Source: Schizochytrium sp. TIO01
Lineage: Eukaryota > Protista > Bigyra: Labyrinthulomycetes
Reading direction: 5' to 3'
DNA length: 64,000 nt
Assembly: GCA_004764695.1 (NCBI GenBank)
Contig: SMSO01000037.1
Span: 3,634,747-3,698,746 of the forward strand
Both the position numbers and the translations under genes were made by a program. Within the stretch, counting starts at the first letter, position 1, and each line of letters begins with the position of its first letter. Below the pieces are notes generated by a model that saw nothing but the letters and a program-made list of their open reading frames with translations, searched no databases and was not told the DNA's origin. Positions 49,871 through 64,000 of this stretch are shown here, in pieces.

Positions 49871-50674
49871 TCTCTCTCAAGCCTCTGATGACGCAGCCGC
49901 TGCCACCGCGGTTTAGCTCAGAGAGATCTGAACGTAAGCTTGAACCACCCCGTTGTCACAAGGGGACTTCCGACGTATGTGGCAGTCACCGTGGGCACTG
50001 CGCAATCAAAGGGCACGCTCCACGCGAGGACCTGATCGATTGCTTTGGCGCGAAGGTCGCTCGCTCTTTCATGATTAAACCCGTATTTACATTTTCTCCA
50101 CACTTTGTTGTATTCCCTAATTACCTCTATTCCTAAGTATGATCAGATGATGAGGTGGTACTAAGGCTCAAACAGAGGGAATACATGCATGAAACTTGTA
50201 TTATGGAATGACCGAGGGAGAAAGCAGAATAGGTGGAATGAGTGATTGAAAAAACAGGAGTGAAATTTTGAAACAACCGACAAAGACAATCTGCAAAAGC
50301 TGTTGGGAACTCCAAGTTATTTCAATGTGACAAGAGCAAAGTAGTGATTTACTAGATATCAGCAGCATGTCTTCTTACACATCGACTGCAATCAATTGAT
50401 ATAATTGTAGTCTGCAGCATTAATTTGTAGCTTTACAGCCTAATTGTTTTTTCTTGTTTTTATGTTGTCATCATTAATGAAATATAAATAATGGTGATAG
50501 AAGAACACTTATTGATGATCGATCAATCGTGAATGTTATTTTGCTCCACAAAGGGAGACCCAAAGCCTAAGCTCAAATCTTATATAAATCGCAGACCTCC
50601 GCTTCTCAAACTTTCATAAGGTATCTTGAAGCTAGGTTAGCTGCTTTGACCGCCGGCTAGTGTCTGACGCAACC

Positions 50675-50844
50675 ATGGGCGACCAGGAGAGCCAAAACTG
50701 GCGCCAGGCCGCAGGCACAGGAGTACCAAGGCGCGGACCAGGCGAAGCAGCAACCGCAGCAGCAGCAACAGCAGCAACAGCTCACGATTCTGGACAACCC
50801 AAACCTACGGGAATTGCGGCTCTAGCTGCGAGAGTTAAGAATCA

Positions 50845-50875
<31 letters not shown>

Positions 50876-52879
50876 TATTTTCACCATCGTCAAAACCACC
50901 AAGAACAAGAGCCGCCAAATTATTATCAAGCAAAACATGTTCAGCAGCACTCACAGCGGCAGTACCAATCATCAAGACAACAGAATGGTGCAAATGCAGC
51001 ACATACAAATGGTAGCTCTCAAAAGAAAGTTTCATTAGCACCAACGAATCCGTGGAAAATACTGCAACCGCCTCGAAACCAAGACGCCAATATTGACAAG
51101 TCAGATAGTTCAATGTCGAAGTCTCCTACACAGCCTTTGGGACAGGATATATCCAAGGAGGCTCATCAAAAAGACCTTGATGAATCAGTATTTGCAAGCA
51201 ACACAACTACGACCTCTGCGTCAGATCAGGATCACAAACCGAAACAAGGAAAACGTCAAGGCCAGCAGAAACAGCAACAAGCTGGTGGGAAGCCCAACAA
51301 ATCTCCAAGTGCACCAAGCAACCAACAGCACCAGACTAATGGGCGCCGTAGAAACAATAAAAAGGGCCCTCGTGAGCCCCAGCGTCCAATGGTCATTCTC
51401 CCCGCAGGAGTGGATATGATGAATAAACCTGTGGCAATTTTAGGTGCGAAGCGAATCGACACTTCTGCGATAGCTATTGCAGGTAAGGGAAAAGAATTGT
51501 CCCCGGGGAACTCAGCTTCTCGCTCTGGAGCTGGAAAGAAGCAGTCTAAATCACCAGCCTCTGGAAAACAACAGGATGGAAATAGTGCAGGCTCCAAATC
51601 ACCTTCTGCCCGAGCACCTCTAGCGTCTCCAAGCAAACCCCCTACCCCTAAAGAGAAATCACGTTGGGCACACGAACTAGTAGATGCAAGATTTGGATTC
51701 GCAGCCTCATCTGCTTCTTTGCCAAGTCATTTATGGCATGCCTCAAATAATAAATACCGCGTTGTTGGTGTGTTGGGCACACAAAGCAGTGGGAAAAGCG
51801 CTCTTCTGAACGCATTGGCGACGTCAAGCCTAACATCTAACCCTGCACAAAATGAAGTTCCTTTTGTGGAGAAGGATTTCGAAGATAGACATGGAATTCT
51901 TCATCAAACAAGGGGCATTCAGTCCTCCTTTTGCACTATTGGTGGAGAACGAGTGCTGCTGTTAGATACCCAGCCGGTTTTAAGTCCGTCAATTTTATAC
52001 GACCTCATTGAGCGTCAAGCGAATCTAAACCTGTGCAGTTCGCATGCTTCACTAGCGACCTTACACGACCTTCAGCTTGCGGTATTCTTGCTCTCCGTGT
52101 GTGATGCAGTGTTGGTCGTTGAGGATGACAATGTGCGGGCTCGGGGTCTATGGAAACTCTTACGTTTTGCTTATCTTTCTAAGACTGGCGATGCTATCAA
52201 AGATAAGGTTGCAGATCTAGTTTTAGTGCGAAACTTTATGAGCACCGCAAGGCTTGAATGCGCCGAGACTCTTGGCAAAGAGCAAGATGCCTGGATCAGC
52301 TTTTTCACTGATCTGATCCCATATGCTGCAAGTCATCCAAAACTCTATTTTTGCCCTCTAGGGTTATATGGAAAGTCCATTGATTCCACCGCCTCAGAAG
52401 TAGACTTTATAAAGCACGTTCTTATGTACGAAGTATTTGATGCTGACGGTTCAGCCTCCACCGGGAGAGCTGGGGCATGGTTAGATCATTCTCGAGCAAC
52501 TGATAGCGCATGGTGGCCATCTGTGGCGCTCCCAGACGACTATAACACAGATGGTCATGACTCAATGACCGAGGAGGAAAGCGATTCTGATAGTGATACT
52601 GATGATGGCATTGAAAATGATTCTGGCTGCAACGCCGTTTGCCCGAGTGCAGGAGATTCTTTCGCACATTTGCATACGCTGCTTGCCTACCGTCGAGCTC
52701 ACCCAATTTTTAAGCTGATAGCGTCTTTGAATGCATCAGCACGATCTACATGTACCGATCGCATTAGTGAATCTGACTGGGTTGACCTTGCTAGTCGGCT
52801 TTGGATGCGAGAAATCCCGCATTCAATCCCGCTGCGAGAGTTTGCAGTTGTTTGTGACGGCTTGCTGCTCTCGACGTAA
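50675..52879 (+). CDS. SMG9: Nonsense-mediated decay factor SMG9 (P-loop G-domain) with Gln-rich disordered N-terminus
   Basis: VVGVLGTQSSGKS, HQTRGI, ERVLLLDTQPVLSPSIL and LQLAVFLLSVC. First ATG at 50675. Confidence 0.85.
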
Positions 52880-53335
52880 GCTGATCTCCCCCAATCCCAA
52901 TCCATTTGTCTTCTTCTCTCCAATTTTATATTCATTTGATTCTACTAGCCATCTGTCTGTATTAAGCATTGGATAAGGAAAAGGTGCCTACGCATAATTT
53001 TTACAAGGGTTTCACTTAGTATTTTCGAAATACTTGAATTTTGACCTAGCAATTCAAAGCACCAAGGCATATATTTCTTGTGGCGCAACCTGATATTCTG
53101 GAGACGCAGCACGAGTGAAAAAATAGGAAATGTAAAAGGATGATAATGATATGATGTTCTTATTCTGTTATTTAATAATTGGGGTTGTGTACAACAAACT
53201 CTTTTCGCACTAGTTCGCGATGCATTTGAATTCCAGAAATCATTCAGATCACCATAGTTTCACTAATGGATACAATACAGCTATGTTTACCATAACCTCT
53301 ACGGATCTGAAGAACTCGACTTCGATCTTACTTGG

Positions 53336-56300
53336 CTAAAGAGCCACCTCGGGGGAAGGATAGATGCCGTAAGCCCGAACACGGTTGATGCCTCCATCGG
53401 GAAAAACCTTCAGACGAAGCTGAGAGACTTCTGGACACGCATCACTGATCTGAAAAACTTTGGCATTGCCAGCGTATGCTTTTACAGGAGTAAGTGCAGC
53501 CATTTCAACCCATTTGCCAGACTTTGACAGGCCCTCCATGGAGATCTCTCTTGGATTGTTATTAACAAAAAAGGTGAAGTCCAGTTCAACGCGCTGCAGC
53601 TTCACAGGCACAGAGAGTTGAATCACTAATTCCTCGTGATGGTTCGGCTCGCGGGAGCGTGCACATTCAAAGCCATCATGCATGGACAAAGGAATAAAAG
53701 GAGAGAGAACTTGGGCAGCTGGGCCATAATGCTGGTTTGTAACGGAAACTAGCTTGCCACCAAATGCAAGACTTGCAGCATCAAACTCTTTTCCTACTAC
53801 AAGAGTAGACAAGTTATGCGCAACCTCCTCAGGTGTTGGCTCATAAAGAAGTTGAAGAGGTTTTTTGGTACTGGGAATTGCATCACTATAGCGAGTGCAC
53901 TTTGAATCCTCTACAGGCACAAAAGTGTCAGTCAAAGATGAGAGCAGAGAGTCTTCTTCGAAGAGTCCCACACGAGAGAGACCCCCATCAGGAAATATGT
54001 CCACTTGAACTTTATCTACCAAAATGGCAGATTGGTAGTCTGGAACCAAAACACGCTTTTCAGCATGACCATCAAGGTGGGTCTTGGGTACTAAAACGAT
54101 CCAGTCATCAGAGTCTTTGCATTTTCCAGAGATTCGCACGTACTCAGCCTGGTTGCCCAAGTGATACTTAGTCGAGATACTAATGTAACGAATACGGCCA
54201 GGACGAGCGAGCGCAAAAATCGCAAAGTCATACTCTTCTGGGTTGTGACGAGCTGTCTCCCAGCTGTCCATAACTTTACCCATAGGGCAAAATAACTCAG
54301 GATCAAATTTGGGTAAGTGATCAGACCCAAGTTGGCACGCTCGCGCGAAGCGCTGGTTAGAGACGCGCTCGACAGTCGAACCAACCAGCAGGTTCGCTGT
54401 TGCTAAAGGGTCCACAGGTCCTTGATCAATGATTTCAGATGGGAGAGTTGGTTCGAACGCCACAAAAACAAGATTCTTGTAGCCAAAGTTAACAATTTCC
54501 TCCTGAGGAATCTGATTGATGTCAACGCTGGAGGTAGGAAACTTCGAGACATCAACACCCTTGAGGTTCATCAGACGGAGAATCGCCTGGCAAGACTCAG
54601 CAATAAAAAACATCGCCCGATTGTCACCATTGGCAAACGCAGTAATACCCTCCCCAGCGTTTGGCCCATCGAAACAATGAATGTAGATGGCACGGTAACC
54701 ATCGTTTGCACCTTGGTGAATCGCAAAGCGGTTAGGGCCTGCCTCACCTACAAAGACGCCAAGTCCCATCAAAACACCCATAAAGTCACGGCACCCTTTA
54801 TCAGTACCATGAAGCATTTTGATAGCGGTATCATGGGAGATTGGACCACAACCTTCCTTGTTGCGGTATGCTTGTCCAAGCTGGTCAAGGAATCGCGTCA
54901 TACCACGCGGGGTACCCAGCGCGCCTGCAGCAAAGGCAGGAAACATCTTTCGAGTTGCCTTAATTGTGCAGCCAATATCATCATAGCCGCATGCAACGTC
55001 ACTGTTCTCGGGTTTGTAAGCAAAGGTAATATCATGTTCGATACCAAGAGCTTGGAGGAAAGGCCTGGTCAATTCGTCAATCGATTTGTCACCACCTTCA
55101 AGCTGCTCAATCAAATGTTGAAGGACAAGAAACCCACCACCGCTGTATTGAAATAAACTTCCAGGCTTACCAACAACATCAATAGGTGGGTATCCATACC
55201 TTTCATTGCCTTCAAGAAAGTCCCGAGTGTCGGGCATTGTTTCATCAAGGGGAACTCCGTTGACGTAATGCATGTTGAGGGCGCTGTGACTCATAAGATG
55301 CCATAGAAGAACCTTGTCACCGTATTTACTGTGACGAATACGAAACGTCGAGGTTGTTTTCTCCAGCAGATCATTGACAGGAGTGTTCAAAGAGATATTG
55401 CGTTCACCAAAGTACTCGATTGCAAACGCAGATCCGATGGTTTTGGAGAGTGAAGCAATTTCAAACATGGTATCTGGCTTGACCGCGGCCTTCATACGGT
55501 GGGCATCCCCGAAGCACACGGGTTGGCCATTAAGGCAAAAGCTAGCGCCAGCAACCTCGTGCTTCTTGCGCAATGACTCAATAGTCTCCAGTAAGTCATC
55601 AGTGGGCTCATCGATGAGACGTTTCATTGTGATTTGCCACAACGCTTCACGTGCATTCTCAAGTTCTTGTTCTGCAGAATTGTTAATTCTATTTTCAAGG
55701 ACGTCGAGAAGTTCTTGGGCTGACTTGCCCTTGGCCGAAACAAGAAACTTGACACCGAACTTTGCAATGTACTCAGCCCCTAATTCACAAAGTCGAAGCC
55801 GAGCATTTTCAGCGTTATCATCCACCGAAGCGAAAACCTTAGCCTGTTCAGCACTTGCAAGCTTGTCGAGCTTACCTGCACCTTGACCAATGTCACCATG
55901 GAACCCAGCAGACTCGATAACTTCTTCTAGGTTGAAACTGCGAATAACTCGTTCTGCTAGTTCCATGTCTGTGGCTACCGTTTTTGCCATGGTTCGCGCA
56001 AATCTCATGGCACCACAACGCTCAAAGAAGTAATGAAATCGCTTTGCATAGGGGTCCTGCATTGCGTATTTTACTGCATCGAATGCGGCCGCAGCCTCCC
56101 ATGGATTTTCACTTGTGCGAATACGATCCACAGTGAATGGATACAACAGTTCAGTCACGAACTCCACTGGTTTGGCGTCACAGACAAACTTGAGAAGGAG
56201 CTCCATAGCGACTGGATACCACTTTGCAGTTTTAGGAGACCACTCTACGTGCACAAGCTTACCTTCGCGCACTTTTCCACGACGGATAGCATTGAGCTCT

Positions 56301-58090
56301 TCATGCGCAATGCGAAGAAAATCCTCTATCGGGAAGCGGCCATGGTGGATCTCAGCCCAGAGCTCCCAACGAGAGCGTTCAATGGTTGCCAAGTCATCAA
56401 GGACCAAAACTTGAACATTGTCCACCCGAGCTGGAAGTCCAACGCAGCCGTTGCCTGCTAGCCAGTCAGCGAGATATTGGAGGGACTGGAAAATGTTATA
56501 TCGGATTTCTTCGGGATCATTGTTTGCAACTTGTGCTGACTCGGCAACGTTAGCAACCACAAGTGAGCGAGCAAAGTTTGGTGCACCAACCTCAACAGGC
56601 CCAGCAGGATCTTGACCTTGAGCAAATGCAAGGATTTCTTCTTGATGAATTTTATCAAGAAGAGTCTCTTTGACGAGCTGTTCAAATGCAGGCATGTCTT
56701 TGTCCCATGTAAGCGCAATGGCAGTGGCCACACGAACATAGCGAGGGTCTGCAAGCCAGAAGCCAGTAAGACCTCTGCGAAGTTGTGTGACAATATCTTT
56801 GAAAAGACCACGCAGAGCAATCTGCAATGAAGCATCTTTTGTGTCCCACGACAAAGGCAAAACACCATACATACCTCCAATAGGCAAGCCTCCACGTCCT
56901 CCAATGACACGAGAAACCAATTCATGGGAAGCCTTGACATGTTTAAGTACAATAGTTGTATCGGCTTTAACCGGAATTCGAAAGTTCGGATCTTCCTTAT
57001 ATAATCGTGCTGTTGCTGCCAGGTAGTCATGCCAGCCCAATGAAGCGCCAGCAAAGTAAGGATGTAAGGCGTCGGCAATCTCATTGGCGCGAAAGATTGC
57101 ACGCGGGTTCTCGAGTACAACTAAAACTCGAACAGTGCCAATCACATATGCTGTATGGATGGCTTTGATTTCGCGCTCAACAGTTTGAATAAGATGTGCA
57201 AGATAGGCAGCCTCTTCTTCGTTTTCAAGTTTCGGCATGTAAAAAACTAAAGCTTCTGGTTTGTCCCAGTGTTCAAGGATATGGAGGGCGAGCTCGAGGA
57301 TGTGGAAAGGTACAGGCTCGCTGTTCGCCTGAAAGACGTACGTACAGGGTAGAGCCAAACCCGGGAGACGCTTGAAAGCTTGAGAGAGAGATGCAGGAGA
57401 GCTAGAGCCCTGGGTCATTTCAGGTTTGCGTTGAAAACATGCTGAGAGGTTAGCGTTGGCAGTTTCGGTCGTATCACGCAAAGGTGTTTGAGAATCTTCA
57501 AAGTCAACACCCCATCGAGGAGGTTTATCTGTGGTAGCCAAAATCTTCTCAACGCAAGCCGGTTCACTTGCAAGGCGAGCGTCATGCGCACAGAGTGCCT
57601 TCTGGCATCCCTCTGCGCTGTCCGCCAGGCCAAAAACTGTAACGTGTTCACCTTTAAGAAATTCCGGTAAAGCTTCGATTTGCTTGCCGGAAGGCTGTGC
57701 AAAGTTGTCGGTAATTGGGCCTATTACCACACGGCCATCAGCATCTCGCTGGCCAAAGATGGTGCCATAGGACTCGTCATTTAGCTTGCGGCCTAGTTTC
57801 GCATTGAGGCCTGCGCAAGCTCGCATGCGCTGGTCAATGAATGCTCTATCTTTTTTGCGTTGCGCAAGGACTTTGGCTAGTTCTTTACGCATCTCGCGAC
57901 AGACTTTTGCCACAAGGCCAGATCCTTGACCAAGGAGTCTCTGCGGGACTGGTTCAGAGACTAAAAGATGTTCATTTGAAACGTGCGCCATCGCATCATC
58001 GCCATCTTCATCTTGGCAGATCTTGCGAGCATCTGACGCAAGGCGCTTTGCAAGCTCCTTCGGGATTGTTTCTTCAAAAAGCATTGTCAT
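53336..58090 (-). CDS. Four-domain purine-catabolism fusion: malate synthase-like + OHCU decarboxylase + beta-lactamase-family serine hydrolase + allantoicase (1584 aa)
   Basis: aa ~50-655: DFEDS, KRLPGL, FYMPKLENEEEA, VVLEN, LGWHDY, GGMYG, WLAGNGCV, DDLATIERSRWELW. aa ~683-826: HGDIG, SAEQ, YIAKFGVKFLVSAKGK, RINNSAEQE, ITMKRL. aa ~832-1175: FEIASLSK, LMSHS, PGSLFQYSGGG, HQGAND. aa ~1232-1576: two allantoicase repeats (MDSWETAR..FPDGGLSRV and DGFECARSR..FPDGGINRVRAYG). Confidence 0.9.
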   Translation of the reverse strand: MTMLFEETIPKELAKRLASDARKICQDEDGDDAMAHVSNEHLLVSEPVPQRLLGQGSGLVAKVCREMRKELAKVLAQRKKDRAFIDQRMRACAGLNAKLGRKLNDESYGTIFGQRDADGRVVIGPITDNFAQPSGKQIEALPEFLKGEHVTVFGLADSAEGCQKALCAHDARLASEPACVEKILATTDKPPRWGVDFEDSQTPLRDTTETANANLSACFQRKPEMTQGSSSPASLSQAFKRLPGLALPCTYVFQANSEPVPFHILELALHILEHWDKPEALVFYMPKLENEEEAAYLAHLIQTVEREIKAIHTAYVIGTVRVLVVLENPRAIFRANEIADALHPYFAGASLGWHDYLAATARLYKEDPNFRIPVKADTTIVLKHVKASHELVSRVIGGRGGLPIGGMYGVLPLSWDTKDASLQIALRGLFKDIVTQLRRGLTGFWLADPRYVRVATAIALTWDKDMPAFEQLVKETLLDKIHQEEILAFAQGQDPAGPVEVGAPNFARSLVVANVAESAQVANNDPEEIRYNIFQSLQYLADWLAGNGCVGLPARVDNVQVLVLDDLATIERSRWELWAEIHHGRFPIEDFLRIAHEELNAIRRGKVREGKLVHVEWSPKTAKWYPVAMELLLKFVCDAKPVEFVTELLYPFTVDRIRTSENPWEAAAAFDAVKYAMQDPYAKRFHYFFERCGAMRFARTMAKTVATDMELAERVIRSFNLEEVIESAGFHGDIGQGAGKLDKLASAEQAKVFASVDDNAENARLRLCELGAEYIAKFGVKFLVSAKGKSAQELLDVLENRINNSAEQELENAREALWQITMKRLIDEPTDDLLETIESLRKKHEVAGASFCLNGQPVCFGDAHRMKAAVKPDTMFEIASLSKTIGSAFAIEYFGERNISLNTPVNDLLEKTTSTFRIRHSKYGDKVLLWHLMSHSALNMHYVNGVPLDETMPDTRDFLEGNERYGYPPIDVVGKPGSLFQYSGGGFLVLQHLIEQLEGGDKSIDELTRPFLQALGIEHDITFAYKPENSDVACGYDDIGCTIKATRKMFPAFAAGALGTPRGMTRFLDQLGQAYRNKEGCGPISHDTAIKMLHGTDKGCRDFMGVLMGLGVFVGEAGPNRFAIHQGANDGYRAIYIHCFDGPNAGEGITAFANGDNRAMFFIAESCQAILRLMNLKGVDVSKFPTSSVDINQIPQEEIVNFGYKNLVFVAFEPTLPSEIIDQGPVDPLATANLLVGSTVERVSNQRFARACQLGSDHLPKFDPELFCPMGKVMDSWETARHNPEEYDFAIFALARPGRIRYISISTKYHLGNQAEYVRISGKCKDSDDWIVLVPKTHLDGHAEKRVLVPDYQSAILVDKVQVDIFPDGGLSRVGLFEEDSLLSSLTDTFVPVEDSKCTRYSDAIPSTKKPLQLLYEPTPEEVAHNLSTLVVGKEFDAASLAFGGKLVSVTNQHYGPAAQVLSPFIPLSMHDGFECARSREPNHHEELVIQLSVPVKLQRVELDFTFFVNNNPREISMEGLSKSGKWVEMAALTPVKAYAGNAKVFQISDACPEVSQLRLKVFPDGGINRVRAYGIYPSPEVAL

Positions 58091-58517
58091 TCGTGCACCT
58101 CAGGTCTGTCGCGTCTGACTCCAAGACCTTCGTTTCAATTCGCTGTTTATTTCTGCAGCTTTGTCCAATCTGAGTTGACCTTCGTCGTTTCACGTCTTCT
58201 TCTCTGCCAATCCTCCAGGACAAGGCAGGACACGCAGGATGAAGGCAGAAATAGAAATAGGCGAGAAGCTTTCAAAAGCTCCACTTCTTGACGCGAGCAA
58301 GTTCGTTGTGCCTGCTGCCGGCCTTCTCTTGTACTTGGGGGCTGGATGGCTCTGCGTGGGTGTAGCTGTGATCGCTTGCAGCGCTTGCGGTTCAGGCAGC
58401 GCGGAGTCCCTTGCGCACGGGGCGCAGACGCACGAACGGGATTCGAGTTCTGCCGTTCCTTGCGCTCAAGCAAACTAGGAAACAAAGAAAGAAGGAAAAA
58501 GACAGAGAGAAAAGAGA

Positions 58518-62400: not shown

Positions 62401-62831
62401 GATCCTTAGCAATAGGGGAAGAAGGAGAGCAAAGAAAGAATGCAATAGAAAAAGAATGCGAAAGAAAGCGAAAGGAAGAAAGAACGAAGCAGAGACAGAA
62501 CTATTTCTAGCAAGAGCTTGAGTCGGGACAGGTAAGCCGCAAACCTTTGCAGCGAAGTTGCAGCATACACGATACGACACAGCACGACGCAAGATATTGT
62601 TACAGAGAAATATAAATTGGCCGCAGGTCTGTAAAGTTTACCTCTGCGCTCGCGAGCAGTCCTGAAATCGAGAACTGGCCTGTCGATATCACTGTTGTTA
62701 TCCAACAGCAGCAAGAAAAAGCACTCCAAGGCCATCCTGGACGGAGATATAAGCGACAATAAAGATTGCGAGGTTGCAAGCTCAAAGCTCCAGCTCTTTG
62801 TGAGGGACTGCACAGACCAGAAAGGGCCAAC

Positions 62832-64000
62832 ATGTTTGATTTGGATGTAGTTATCGTTGGAGGCGGCATCGCTGGCCTCAGCACCGCGCTGTTCCTTAAG
62901 CGCTTTGGTTACAATGTAGTTGTCTACGAGCGGACTCCTAAAATCTTGCCCGTGGGTGCTGCAATTTCTGTGTGGAGTAATGGTGTCAAGGTAATGAACC
63001 GTCTTGGCTTTGGCAAACAAATGCAGGAGCTTGGAGGCCAGATGGATTCAATGATCTATCGCGACGAAAAGGGCACAGAGCTAGTCAACATGGACTTGCG
63101 TCCGGTATACAAGGAAGTCGGGGAGCGTTGTTATCCGGTACCTCGTGCTGATCTGCAGCAGATGCTCATGGACCAGTATGTCGCCGAGGGTGGCAACTTG
63201 GTCTTGGGTCGTTCCTGCGTCAGCGTTCACAAAGTGGATGAGAGCGACGAGAACAGCAAGCTATATGTGAAGTTCGATGATGGGTCAAAGTCGATGGAGT
63301 GTGACCTTTTGGTCGGTGCTGACGGGATTCGCTCAAATGTTCGCACCTATGTGCTTGAAAAGGAGGTTGCGCCTGTATACCACTACACAAACTGGAATGG
63401 TCTTGTTACCATGGACTCTGCAATTGGCGAGCAGACTGAATGGGTTATGCACGTTGGAGAGGGCAAACGCGCATCGGTCATGCCTGTCGGAAATGGACGA
63501 TTTTACTTTTTCATGGGTGCTCCTATCGCAGAAGATGCCCCCGCACCCGAACGCGGATCGGAGGCTATGCGTGAGGAGCTCAAGCAGATCTTCAAGGGCT
63601 GGCCCGCAAAGGTTCAGAATTTGATTGATGCTATTGATGTTAACACGTTGAACCGCATACCCATTTGCGATGTCGACCCTCTTCCTCACTTGTGGCGTGG
63701 CCACGCGGTACTGATTGGCGATGCTGCTCACTCGACCACACCAACTCTCGGCCAAGGCGGCTGCCAGGCGCTTGAGGACTCGGAGGTGCTTGCATCCTTC
63801 CTCACAACCACCAATGTGGGGGTTGCTGATGCTCTATCTCGTTACCAGCAGCACCGCCTCGAGCGAGTCCACACAATGGTGCTTAAGGCTCGTGAACGTA
63901 CAGCACAAATCTACCCTCGTAATGCAGAACAGGAACGTGCAACACAAGAATGGTATAATGAACTCAAGACTTCCAAGGACATTGGAACTAATATTCTTCG
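62832..64000 (+). CDS. hpxO: FAD-dependent urate hydroxylase (HpxO-like flavin monooxygenase); 3' end runs off the window
   Basis: Manual translation from ATG 62832 (in-frame TAA upstream at 62760): VIVGGGIAGL, GAAISVWSNGVK, RADLQ, LVGADGIRS, YTNWNGLV, VGEGKRASVMPV..GRFYFF, LIGDAAHSTTPTLGQGGCQALED, MVLKARER and WYNEL. These match recalled HpxO-specific motifs beyond the generic monooxygenase fingerprints. Confidence 0.88.
   Translation, partial: MFDLDVVIVGGGIAGLSTALFLKRFGYNVVVYERTPKILPVGAAISVWSNGVKVMNRLGFGKQMQELGGQMDSMIYRDEKGTELVNMDLRPVYKEVGERCYPVPRADLQQMLMDQYVAEGGNLVLGRSCVSVHKVDESDENSKLYVKFDDGSKSMECDLLVGADGIRSNVRTYVLEKEVAPVYHYTNWNGLVTMDSAIGEQTEWVMHVGEGKRASVMPVGNGRFYFFMGAPIAEDAPAPERGSEAMREELKQIFKGWPAKVQNLIDAIDVNTLNRIPICDVDPLPHLWRGHAVLIGDAAHSTTPTLGQGGCQALEDSEVLASFLTTTNVGVADALSRYQQHRLERVHTMVLKARERTAQIYPRNAEQERATQEWYNELKTSKDIGTNIL

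What the first reader, a model, noticed from the sequence alone, without database searches (positions are those of the whole stretch)
53336..58090. Single-polypeptide ureide degradation line: malate synthase, OHCU decarboxylase, serine hydrolase and allantoicase
Seen: one uninterrupted, intronless 1584-codon ORF with four recognisable domains. These are malate synthase-like (nt ~57940-56130), OHCU decarboxylase/UraD (~56040-55610, with the conserved His and Glu in HGDIG and SAEQ), beta-lactamase family (~55600-54570) and a two-repeat allantoicase (~54400-53360). Established: the pathway runs urate -> HIU -> OHCU -> (S)-allantoin -> allantoate -> ureidoglycolate + urea -> glyoxylate -> malate, and yeast DAL7 is a malate synthase dedicated to allantoin catabolism. 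The fusions I know in this pathway are two-domain, such as UraD-UraH allantoin synthase. Inference: this protein handles most of the route from OHCU to malate, releasing nitrogen as urea and capturing carbon as malate, possibly with channelling of unstable intermediates. I know of no description of this architecture.
Basis: partly seen in the sequence, partly recalled or inferred. Interest (0 to 1): 0.95.

Follow-up and report, generated by a model that had tools for sequence, protein, structure and literature searches.

The report
Four-enzyme purine-breakdown fusion protein
A marine protist (thraustochytrid) carries one expressed gene, shared with hundreds of predatory bacteria, that strings four purine-waste enzymes into one protein. 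Its penicillinase-like part is probably a previously unrecognised kind of allantoinase, and its "malate synthase" part probably splits ureidoglycolate rather than making malate.

Summary
Window 53336-58090 (-) is one intronless 1584-codon ORF with malate-synthase-like (MSL), OHCU decarboxylase, beta-lactamase-family (Blac) and two-repeat allantoicase domains. A 5.3-kb MMETSP transcript and contigs from four independent studies cover it end to end.

The architecture is not unique. At least 232 bacterial species, mostly Bdellovibrionota and some Planctomycetota, and several thraustochytrids encode it under uninformative names. I found no paper describing it.

In bacteria it sits in operons of urate oxidase, HIU hydrolase and the fusion, often with xanthine dehydrogenase.

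Among 116 Bdellovibrionota genomes, the 6 with an ordinary allantoicase all have AllB allantoinase. The 25 with the fusion-type allantoicase have neither AllB nor PuuE, and all 25 have the Blac domain in the same ORF. Shorter forms (Blac+Allc, UraD+Blac+Allc) keep the same order. Blac is therefore very probably a serine-type allantoinase.

The MSL domain keeps the glyoxylate and catalytic residues but has Arg276 changed to Trp. In eukaryotes its acetyl-CoA segment is degenerate. It coexists with a canonical malate synthase. In the one genome lacking it, AllA ureidoglycolate lyase sits next to the gene. It probably is a ureidoglycolate lyase.

The likely route is OHCU to glyoxylate plus 2 urea, not to malate.

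The parts
53336..58090 (-). Whole gene: 1584-codon intronless ORF for the four-domain protein (MSL-UraD-Blac-Allantoicase)
   Evidence: The transcript-level protein P0241 is 1582/1584 identical. Contigs of 4 runs cover it without joints.
56111..58090 (-). Malate-synthase-like (MSL) domain, aa 1-660: N-terminal clasp, TIM barrel and C-terminal plug. Probable (S)-ureidoglycolate urea-lyase.
   Evidence: Pfam PF01274 and PF20659. The best PDB hit by sequence is E. coli MSA 3CUZ. The AF2 model has pLDDT 90.7 and matches 3CV2 with target-normalised TM 0.82. R241, E327, D355, M407, W445 and D566 equal MSA R166, E250, D278, M330, W365 and D447. MSA R276 is replaced by W353. The CoA segment is degenerate.
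55613..56047 (-). OHCU decarboxylase (UraD) domain, aa 682-826
   Evidence: PF09349 at 66 bits. NCBIfam PRK13798 covers aa 682-825. H731, E748, Q749 and R801 are invariant in A1.
54491..55615 (-). Beta-lactamase/DD-peptidase-fold serine hydrolase domain, aa 826-1200. Motifs: S880-L-S-K883, Y982-S-G, H1125-Q-G. Candidate serine-type allantoinase.
   Evidence: PF00144. Invariant motifs. AF2 pLDDT 94.8. The nearest PDB folds reach only TM 0.62-0.72 at 15-20% identity. Phyletic complementarity with AllB.
53351..54391 (-). Allantoicase domain, two jelly-roll repeats, aa 1234-1580
   Evidence: PF03561 at 160.7 bits with 2 stretches. TIGR02961 at 156 bits, below the 277.9 cut-off, so it is a divergent subtype.
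53234..58484 (-). Extent of a transcript-sized contig (5,250 nt), with about 100 nt of 3' and about 390 nt of 5' flank around the ORF
   Evidence: run X13 record 4. The neighbouring contigs have different depth. The run's RNA nature is a guess by the tool.
62766..64000 (+). Context: HpxO-type FAD-dependent urate hydroxylase gene, divergent from the fusion gene. It runs 49 nt past the window end.
   Evidence: NF033623 at 476.7 bits over the full-length model (cut-off 500). The next family scores 195 bits.

Best explanation
The gene encodes one cytosolic or peroxisomal polypeptide that performs the four steps between OHCU and glyoxylate in aerobic purine breakdown.

1. The UraD domain decarboxylates OHCU to (S)-allantoin.
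2. The beta-lactamase-fold domain opens the hydantoin ring through a Ser880/Lys883/Tyr982 acyl-enzyme mechanism and gives allantoate. This would make it a third, serine-type allantoinase analogous to AllB/DAL1 and PuuE.
3. The allantoicase domain releases urea and (S)-ureidoglycolate.
4. The malate-synthase-like domain cleaves ureidoglycolate to glyoxylate and a second urea. It works like the vertebrate MS-like ureidoglycolate lyase.

In this organism HpxO (4.7 kb upstream, divergent) and a separate HIU hydrolase feed the protein. A single-chain urease and a canonical malate synthase G deal with the products.

The gene family is bacterial, and the thraustochytrid ancestor most likely acquired the whole fusion by horizontal transfer.

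Shown here: the domains, their conservation, expression as one mRNA, the operon context and the phyletic patterns. Inferred: the two new catalytic assignments, substrate channelling and the direction of transfer.
For: Real, single, expressed gene.

Purine context:
- In 80 bacterial genome loci the gene is flanked by HIUase (65 loci), PuuD-type urate oxidase (59), XDH subunits (23-26) and uricase (6).
- The same holds in 80 metagenome loci.
- In G000 there are HpxO next door, an HIUase, a urease and MSG.

Blac = allantoinase:
- G000 and 9 fusion-bearing bacterial genomes have no AllB over cut-off. G000 and the four Bdellovibrionota genomes among them were also searched for PuuE and have none. 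Their best amidohydrolase hits are dihydroorotase or dihydropyrimidinase.
- In 116 Bdellovibrionota genomes, 6/6 with a canonical allantoicase have AllB (adjacent in 5) against 0/25 with the fusion type (Fisher p about 1.4e-6). PuuE is 0/116. The Blac subfamily occurs in exactly those 25 genomes, always in the allantoicase ORF.
- The modular series is Blac+Allc, UraD+Blac+Allc and MSL+UraD+Blac+Allc, always in that order.
- The catalytic SxxK, Tyr and HxG motifs are invariant, and the fold model is confident.

MSL = UGL:
- The glyoxylate and catalytic residues are invariant. MSA Arg276 is Trp in all members; this position is Ile in zebrafish UGL (PMC10120013).
- The acetyl-CoA segment (MSA 94-108, 368-369; residues from PMC3112382) is degenerate in the 7 eukaryote sequences.
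- AllA-type lyase is absent from all 24 four-domain genomes and from G000.
- The only Blac+Allc genome without MSL (G055) has allA 19 nt upstream of the Blac-Allc gene.
- A stand-alone MSL sits in a PuuE / racemase / allantoate amidohydrolase / ureidoglycine aminohydrolase operon where only the ureidoglycolate step is missing.
- A canonical MS accompanies ICL in every fusion genome that has ICL, so MSL never replaces it.

Bacterial origin: stand-alone bacterial MSL proteins are basal, and the eukaryote clade is nested.
Against: - No enzyme assay exists. Both new assignments rest on comparative genomics.
- The bacterial MSL domains, fused and stand-alone, retain the MSA-like acetyl-CoA/adenine segment (P97, K101, M/L102, I104, N105, N108, H368, P369). 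They may still bind acetyl-CoA and make malate, or be bifunctional.
- Trp365, replaced in zebrafish UGL, is retained here. Only half of the published UGL signature is met.
- I could not obtain UGL sequences, so there is no phylogenetic placement against the UGL group.
- The AllA displacement rests on a single genome (p = 0.04).
- 14 fusion genomes have no other malate synthase, which is also compatible with MSL being their MS.
- Some allantoicases are reported to cleave ureidoglycolate themselves (my own knowledge).
- The unrooted full-length tree does not by itself give the direction of transfer.
Confidence: 0.6

Rival explanations
1. The N-terminal domain is a true, pathway-dedicated malate synthase like yeast DAL7, so the protein runs OHCU to malate. 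Ureidoglycolate is then cleaved by the allantoicase domain itself or decays spontaneously. Blac is still the allantoinase.
For: - The MS fold and all catalytic residues (R166, E250, D278, D447 equivalents) are invariant.
- Bacterial members keep the MSA acetyl-CoA/adenine segment and Met330/Pro369.
- 14 of 24 fusion genomes have no other MS.
- A precedent is DAL7 in the yeast DAL cluster (PMC13751858).
Against: - In the window's own clade the CoA segment is degenerate while the rest of the domain stays conserved.
- Arg276, invariant in MSA, is Trp in every member.
- The domain scores 88 bits against the 594.5 equivalog cut-off.
- G000 and every ICL-containing fusion genome keep a canonical MS.
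- AllA sits next to the gene exactly where MSL is missing.
- The stand-alone MSL fills the ureidoglycolate gap in an AAH operon.
Confidence: 0.2
2. The MSL domain is bifunctional, at least in bacteria. It cleaves ureidoglycolate and condenses the enzyme-bound glyoxylate with acetyl-CoA, so free glyoxylate is never released. The eukaryotic copy has lost the second half-reaction.
For: This reconciles the retained CoA segment in bacteria with the Arg276Trp change and the AllA displacement. It also fits the relative relaxation of MSL in eukaryotes, where mean identity is 55% against 68% within bacteria while the other domains show the opposite trend.
Against: It is pure inference with no precedent that I know of. 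Zebrafish UGL and Nematostella MS were each monofunctional (PMC10120013).
Confidence: 0.1
3. The Blac domain is not an allantoinase. It has another role (regulatory, peptidase, esterase, or hydrolysis of a different ureide), and allantoin is hydrolysed by an unrecognised enzyme elsewhere.
For: The second motif is Y-S-G, not Y-x-N, and the third is H-Q-G, not K-T-G. The nearest solved structures are esterases, LACTB, DD-peptidases and class C beta-lactamases. No beta-lactamase-fold enzyme is known to open a hydantoin ring (my own knowledge).
Against: - There is perfect co-occurrence with fusion-type allantoicase and perfect exclusion with AllB in 116 genomes.
- The domain is placed between UraD and allantoicase in every architecture.
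- In G055 every other step is assigned to a separate gene and only allantoinase is missing.
Confidence: 0.08
4. The gene is an artefact: a mis-assembly, bacterial contamination or a read-through of separate genes.
For: None was found.
Against: The gene lies on a 5.0-Mb contig between eukaryotic genes. The same ORF appears in an MMETSP transcript and in 24 runs from 11 studies. Orthologues exist in Hondaea and Thraustochytrium.
Confidence: 0.01

Closest known systems
Vertebrate malate-synthase-like ureidoglycolate lyase (UGL; Danio rerio MSL, Dembech et al. 2023, PMC10120013)
   Same: It has the malate synthase A-type fold with the glyoxylate site preserved and the conserved Arg276 lost. The acetyl-CoA site is not conserved, which holds in the window's eukaryote clade. 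[quoted passage not shown]
   Different: Here Arg276 becomes Trp (not Ile) and Trp365 is kept (not Met). The domain is about 150 aa longer, is fused to three other enzymes, and belongs to a mainly bacterial family in which the CoA segment is still conserved. The paper describes the UGL group as eukaryote-only. Membership in that clade could not be tested.
Allantoinases AllB/DAL1/PucH (binuclear-metal amidohydrolase) and PuuE (polysaccharide-deacetylase fold)
   Same: The inferred reaction is the same, (S)-allantoin to allantoate. The position in purine gene clusters is the same, and occurrence is mutually exclusive. PuuE itself was identified by this kind of phyletic and fusion logic (Ramazzina et al. 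2008, my own knowledge).
   Different: The fold is unrelated (class C beta-lactamase / DD-peptidase). The predicted chemistry is a serine nucleophile rather than metal-dependent or deacetylase-like catalysis. There is no sequence similarity.
Known two-domain uricolytic fusions (UraD-HIUase 'allantoin synthase', Bacillus PucL UraD-uricase, PuuE-UraD)
   Same: Consecutive purine-catabolic enzymes are fused, presumably to handle unstable or stereolabile intermediates. UraD is a frequent partner.
   Different: Here four domains cover four consecutive steps, and two of them come from families not previously assigned to the pathway in bacteria.
Yeast DAL7 / canonical malate synthases A and G
   Same: They share the protein superfamily and the catalytic Arg, Glu, Asp, Asp set, and they are genetically associated with allantoin catabolism.
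   Different: DAL7 is a bona fide MSA. The window's domain fails the MSA equivalog cut-off by a wide margin, lacks Arg276 and lacks the CoA-binding segment. The genome has a separate MSG at 1024.7 bits.
Family VIII esterases, LACTB, R61 DD-peptidase, class C beta-lactamases, D-amino-acid amidase (nearest solved folds)
   Same: They share the overall fold, the SxxK nucleophile/base motif and the conserved Tyr.
   Different: Identity is only 15-20% and TM 0.62-0.72. Subfamily-specific motifs (H-S/T-x-L-x-M-H-Y-V-N-G, Y-S-G-G-G-F, F-P-x-x-A-A-G, H-Q-A/G-A-N-D/E-G-F-R) occur both in the fusions and in stand-alone proteins of haptophytes, dinoflagellates and bacteria.

Membership tests
Malate synthase A (EC 2.3.3.9) | MS fold: N-terminal clasp, TIM barrel and C-terminal plug | tested here: met
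   PF01274 at 63.1 bits and PF20659 at 37.3 bits. The AF2 model (pLDDT 90.7) matches 3CV2 and 3CUZ with target-normalised TM 0.80-0.82.
Malate synthase A (EC 2.3.3.9) | Catalytic Asp447 and Arg166, and Mg ligands Glu250 and Asp278 | tested here: met
   D566, R241, E327 and D355 are invariant in 54 aligned sequences.
Malate synthase A (EC 2.3.3.9) | Acetyl-CoA/adenine-binding residues (MSA Ile94, Thr95, Gly96, Met102, Met330, Pro369; PMC3112382) | tested here: not met
   The window has V, F, G, G, M, P at these positions, and the following I104/N105/N108 are Q/K/C. The segment is variable across the 7 eukaryote sequences but conserved in bacterial members.
Malate synthase A (EC 2.3.3.9) | Curated equivalog score (TIGR01344 cut-off 594.5) and conserved Arg276 | tested here: not met
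   88.3 bits. Arg276 is Trp353 in all members.
MS-like ureidoglycolate lyase (UGL group, PMC10120013) | Substitutions Arg276Ile and Trp365Met with the rest of the glyoxylate site preserved | tested here: inconclusive
   Arg276 is replaced, but by Trp. Trp365 is retained. The other glyoxylate-site residues are preserved.
MS-like ureidoglycolate lyase (UGL group, PMC10120013) | Acetyl-CoA site not conserved | tested here: met
   This is met for the window and the 6 other eukaryote-clade sequences. It is not met for bacterial homologues.
MS-like ureidoglycolate lyase (UGL group, PMC10120013) | 2-aa insertion at the glyoxylate/acetyl-CoA interface, and placement inside the UGL clade | not testable with these tools
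   A 5-13-aa insertion lies just before the catalytic Asp. No UGL sequence or supplementary alignment was available, so I could not check whether the position is equivalent or where the domain falls in the tree.
OHCU decarboxylase (UraD, PF09349) | Pfam gathering score, and the conserved His (H-x-x-I-G), Glu (S-x-E-Q) and Arg | tested here: met
   66 bits against a cut-off of 24. H731, E748, Q749 and R801 are invariant. It falls below the NCBIfam equivalog cut-offs at 63.6 against 139.4. The catalytic roles come from my own knowledge of the zebrafish Urad structure.
Allantoicase (PF03561) | Two allantoicase repeats above the Pfam cut-off | tested here: met
   160.7 bits with 2 stretches. TIGR02961 scores 156.1 against 277.9, so this is a divergent subtype, distinct from the canonical allantoicases of the same phylum at 173-181 bits per repeat.
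Beta-lactamase/transpeptidase-like serine hydrolases (PF00144) | Fold, the SxxK nucleophile motif and the conserved Tyr | tested here: met
   68.4 bits. S880-x-x-K883 and Y982 are invariant. AF2 pLDDT is 94.8 and Foldseek probability is 1.0 to esterase IS11, LACTB and R61. YxN is Y-S-G and KTG is H-Q-G.
Allantoinase (functional class; AllB TIGR03178 / PuuE TIGR03212) | Sequence membership in a known allantoinase family | tested here: not met
   No domain of the protein matches either family. The assignment is one of function (analogy), not of family.
Allantoinase (functional class; AllB TIGR03178 / PuuE TIGR03212) | Catalysis of (S)-allantoin to allantoate | not testable with these tools
   Only indirect support: phyletic complementarity of 6/6 against 0/25 and the domain order.

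The most novel reading that the evidence does not exclude
The beta-lactamase-fold domain is a third, serine-nucleophile class of allantoinase. It is widespread in predatory bacteria and, as a stand-alone protein, in marine protists (haptophytes, dinoflagellates, thraustochytrids).

The MSL domain is a bacterial-origin ureidoglycolate lyase derived from the malate synthase fold, separately from or ancestrally to the animal UGL.

Together with UraD and allantoicase they form a four-step single-chain metabolon that was transferred whole from bacteria to a eukaryote.
Probability: 0.5. Interest if true: 0.85.

Novelty: new variant of a known kind. Interest (0 to 1): 0.78.

Why it matters
Allantoinase is known in only two unrelated forms. 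A serine-hydrolase form would fill 'missing allantoinase' gaps in many genomes, namely Bdellovibrionota, some Planctomycetota, thraustochytrids and probably haptophytes and dinoflagellates. It would also extend the chemistry of the beta-lactamase fold to hydantoin rings.

If the MSL domain is a ureidoglycolate lyase, the recently found animal enzyme has a large bacterial counterpart. Hundreds of database entries named 'malate synthase' or 'serine hydrolase' would then be mis-annotated.

The fusion is also a clean example of a whole multi-step bacterial pathway module fixed in a eukaryotic nucleus next to another bacterial-type gene (HpxO). It gives a single recombinant protein with which to study channelling of stereolabile ureides.

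Thraustochytrids are industrial DHA producers, so their nitrogen recycling has practical interest.

Tried and rejected
I obtained gene context through the search for related loci and the genome search instead.
- **Lohman 2008 (PMC2578798)** is not held, and no supplement of PMC10120013 is held. I took the MSA acetyl-CoA residues from PMC3112382. I could not compare the domain with UGL sequences.
- **The metagenome scan with stand-alone MSL proteins** returned mostly fused genes. Only L104 and L171 were stand-alone with flanks.
- **A Planctomycetota replicate** of the phyletic test had only one fusion genome among 201 sampled, so it gave no statistics.
- **DUF6986 as a specific UGL candidate.** It is present in all 6 canonical clusters but also in many genomes without allantoicase, so it is not specific.
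- **A peroxisomal PTS1.** The window protein ends in VAL, while the Thraustochytrium orthologue ends in AKL. This says nothing firm about location.
- **The protein Atlas search** gave only generic beta-lactamase clusters.
- **Failed or mis-set calls:** 68, 82 and 89 had bad coordinates, handle or size, and 77 timed out.
- **Contamination or mis-assembly** was rejected.
Full report
**1. The observation**

Window 53336-58090 (-) is a single ATG-initiated ORF of 1584 codons. Pfam finds five domain models above their gathering cut-offs:

| Model | Residues | Score |
|---|---|---|
| MS_TIM-barrel | 255-475 | 63.1 bits |
| MS_C | 527-650 | 37.3 bits |
| OHCU_decarbox | 709-825 | 66 bits |
| Beta-lactamase | 836-1157 | 68.4 bits |
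| Allantoicase (two repeats) | 1237-1377 (best-scoring repeat) | 160.7 bits |

All four domains are divergent. None reaches NCBI's equivalog cut-offs: allantoicase 156 against 278, malate synthase A 88 against 594.5, UraD 64 against 139.

The window lies on a 5.0-Mb contig of a 64-Mb, 37-contig genome. Its neighbours are eukaryotic genes: cyclin, Arp2/3 p34, an ABCA transporter, Nsp1 and an MFS transporter.

**2. It is a real, singly transcribed gene**

The 90% cluster of the protein contains an MMETSP transcript of 5,297 nt. Its complete ORF is 1582/1584 identical.

Twenty-four public runs from 11 studies hold the stretch. Contigs of four runs from four studies cover the ORF end to end with no joints and no indels inside it. 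One 5,250-nt contig spans exactly 53234-58484, and its flanking contigs have different depth, as expected of a transcript. The tool only guesses that these runs are RNA.

Orthologues with the same four domains occur in Hondaea fermentalgiana (72% identity, named 'Malate synthase, glyoxysomal'), in Thraustochytrium sp. LLF1b (MMETSP0198) and in other MMETSP transcriptomes. The host is therefore a thraustochytrid. I infer it is probably an Aurantiochytrium-like one.

**3. The architecture is common in databases and absent from the literature I searched**

The full-length search gave 640 hits. The best 120 all have the same architecture and are about 48-50% identical. They come from Bacteriovoracaceae, Bdellovibrio, Halobacteriovorax, Oligoflexus and Planctomycetota, and are named 'serine hydrolase', 'malate synthase' or a slash-list of domains.

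A scan of one genome per bacterial species found relatives in 232 species.

Six literature searches found no description of the fusion, of a beta-lactamase-type allantoinase, or of purine catabolism in thraustochytrids or Bdellovibrio.

**4. Gene context proves purine catabolism**

Conserved neighbours over 80 bacterial genome loci:

| Neighbour | Loci |
|---|---|
| HIU hydrolase | 65 |
| PuuD-type urate oxidase (PF06181) | 59 |
| XdhC | 26 |
| XDH Mo subunit | 25 |
| XDH FAD/FeS subunit | 23 |
| Deaminase (guanine-deaminase-like) | 8 |
| Uricase | 6 |

Molybdenum-cofactor biosynthesis genes (MoaC 7 loci, MoeA 6) also recur.

Eighty metagenome loci show the same operons, (PuuD or uricase) - HIUase - fusion.

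In this eukaryote an HpxO-type urate hydroxylase lies 4.7 kb upstream in divergent orientation, at window 62766 to past the window end. It scores 476.7 bits over the full-length model against NF033623. The genome also has:

- one HIUase;
- no uricase and no PuuD;
- a single-chain urease;
- a canonical malate synthase G at 1024.7 bits.

**5. The beta-lactamase-fold domain as the missing allantoinase**

UraD makes (S)-allantoin and allantoicase needs allantoate, so an allantoinase must exist.

- G000 and four fusion-bearing Bdellovibrionota genomes have no AllB over cut-off and no PuuE. Their best amidohydrolase hits are dihydroorotases or a dihydropyrimidinase.
- Five Planctomycetota fusion genomes likewise lack AllB.

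In the phylum of Oligoflexus (116 genomes at least 80% complete), 31 have allantoicase. Six are canonical stand-alone genes and 25 are the fusion type.

| Genome class | n | AllB over cut-off | PuuE | Blac subfamily |
|---|---|---|---|---|
| Canonical allantoicase | 6 | 6 (adjacent gene in 5) | 0 | 0 |
| Fusion-type allantoicase | 25 | 0 | 0 | 25, always in the allantoicase ORF |
| No allantoicase | 85 | 1 | 0 | 0 |

For AllB, 6/6 against 0/25 gives a Fisher exact p of about 1.4e-6 (my calculation).

An exhaustive profile search shows about 60 representative clusters of this subfamily. They have four architectures:

- stand-alone, 390-490 aa;
- Blac+Allc, about 750 aa;
- UraD+Blac+Allc, about 1000 aa;
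- the four-domain form.

The order is always [MSL]-[UraD]-Blac-Allc, which puts Blac at the allantoinase position.

The Ser-x-x-Lys motif, Tyr982 and His1125-x-Gly are invariant. The AF2 model is very confident (pLDDT 94.8). Its nearest solved structures reach only TM 0.62-0.72 at 15-20% identity: family VIII esterase IS11, LACTB, a Pyrococcus PBP homologue, R61 DD-peptidase, class C beta-lactamases, ClbP and D-amino-acid amidase (the best sequence E-value is 4.5e-5).

Stand-alone homologues at 38-47% identity over the full length share all the subfamily motifs. They include Prymnesium parvum, a Symbiodinium fragment and several MMETSP and EukProt proteins.

I put Blac = allantoinase at about 0.8.

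**6. The malate-synthase-like domain**

Fold and catalytic residues are those of MSA. However:

- **(a)** MSA Arg276, one of the two glyoxylate-site residues changed in zebrafish UGL (PMC10120013), is Trp in all 50 family members aligned. Trp365 is retained.
- **(b)** The acetyl-CoA/adenine contacts of MSA (Ile94, Thr95, Gly96, Met102, Met330, Pro369; PMC3112382) lie in a segment that bacterial members keep as VTLFGPPDxAK(M/L)SINAMN. In the seven eukaryote sequences that segment is degenerate; the window reads VTVFGLADSAEGCQKALC. His368 and Pro369 are variable there as well.
- **(c)** The rest of the domain remains conserved in eukaryotes at 55% mean identity, similar to the other domains. In bacteria it is the best-conserved domain at 68%.
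- **(d)** G000, and every fusion genome that has isocitrate lyase, keeps a canonical MS at 260-376 bits. The other 14 fusion genomes have neither ICL nor MS. MSL therefore never stands in for the glyoxylate-shunt enzyme.
- **(e)** AllA-type ureidoglycolate lyase is absent from G000 and from all 24 four-domain genomes.
- **(f)** MSL is present in 24 of the 25 Blac genomes. The exception, G055, has a two-domain Blac+Allc gene preceded by allA 19 nt upstream. Separate uraD, puuD, hiuH and XDH genes lie beside it, and only a canonical MS is found elsewhere.
- **(g)** A stand-alone MSL (689 aa) sits inside an operon of the following genes:
  - PuuE (525 against cut-off 424.6);
  - an ABC transporter;
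  - a hydantoin-racemase-family protein;
  - (S)-ureidoglycine aminohydrolase (328.6 against 200);
  - allantoate amidohydrolase (469.5 against 452);
  - a GntR regulator.

  Only the ureidoglycolate step is unassigned there.

I conclude that the window's domain most likely works as a ureidoglycolate lyase (about 0.6). True or additional malate synthase activity remains possible, especially in bacteria.

I do not file it as a member of the animal UGL clade. That test could not be run, and the published group is eukaryote-only.

**7. Origin**

In the full-length tree, seven eukaryote-type sequences form one clade (support 100) against all bacteria.

In the MSL-domain tree rooted on canonical MSA, the family sits on a very long branch. 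Stand-alone bacterial proteins (Myxococcota and Bradymonadales types) are basal. The eukaryote clade is sister to a clade of Planctomycetota fusions, Desulfobulbales stand-alone proteins and Bdellovibrionota fusions.

This pattern, the bacterial operon context and the modular bacterial series favour one ancient bacterium-to-thraustochytrid transfer of the complete fusion. The direction is inferred, not proven.

**8. Verdict**

The protein most likely runs OHCU to (S)-allantoin, allantoate, (S)-ureidoglycolate and then glyoxylate, releasing two urea. Urease and a separate malate synthase G act downstream. It does not run to malate itself.

The novelty lies in two unrecognised enzyme assignments and in the four-step fusion with its cross-domain distribution, not in the uniqueness of the ORF.

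Noticed in passing
window 62766-64000 (+), continuing 49 nt past the window end (L103:1013-2296): A bacterial-type FAD-dependent urate hydroxylase HpxO (NF033623, 476.7 bits, full-length) lies 4.7 kb from the fusion gene in divergent orientation. The 4.7-kb spacer has no long ORF. G000 has no uricase and no PuuD, so HpxO is probably its urate-oxidising enzyme.
   Followed up: partly
L100:7544-8887 (G038). Also G090:C2:18111-19400, G031:C305:5719-7014, G030, G035, G053: DUF6986 (PF22484, about 450 aa, with a weak hit to the malate synthase TIM barrel) sits inside the canonical puuD-allB-allantoicase-uraD-hiuH clusters, next to a class V aminotransferase. It also occurs in 24 other genomes of the phylum, so its link to purines is not exclusive. 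No paper mentions it.
   Followed up: partly
G071:C19:143994-147074 and G054:C64:11866-14952. Also G001:C1:3002959-3006070 (L086) and G063:C167: Bdellovibrionota genomes carry a second, divergent malate synthase (about 165 bits). It lies next to a 753-aa isocitrate-lyase-like gene or is fused to one in a single 1420-1465-aa open frame. This is a bacterial counterpart of the nematode bifunctional ICL-MS protein.
   Followed up: no
P0274 (Prymnesium parvum), P0280, P0289, P0328 (MMETSP), P0282, P0307, P0308 (EukProt), P0342 (Symbiodinium pilosum): Stand-alone 400-470-aa proteins of marine protists share every subfamily motif of the fusion's beta-lactamase-fold domain at 39-44% identity. They may be these organisms' allantoinases. 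Whether those genomes lack DAL1/PuuE could not be tested here.
   Followed up: partly
G176:C186:9063-9992 and G278:C355:10435-11394 (Planctomycetota): Canonical-type allantoicase repeats lie in open frames of 921 and 1075 aa, which suggests other allantoicase fusions not examined here.
   Followed up: no
window 53000-53002 and leftwards: Contigs of runs X1 and X4 stop matching the window just left of 53002 and continue with unrelated letters, while X6 and X13 match. This looks like a strain or allele structural difference in the 3' flank of the gene.
   Followed up: no
window 50660-52879 (+): A 739-aa ORF convergent with the fusion gene has no Pfam match at E <= 0.001.
   Followed up: no
C-termini of orthologues (P0004/P0243, P0002, window): The Thraustochytrium sp. 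LLF1b orthologue ends in AKL (PTS1-like) and the Hondaea one in ANI, while the window protein ends in VAL. Peroxisomal targeting may differ between species.
   Followed up: no
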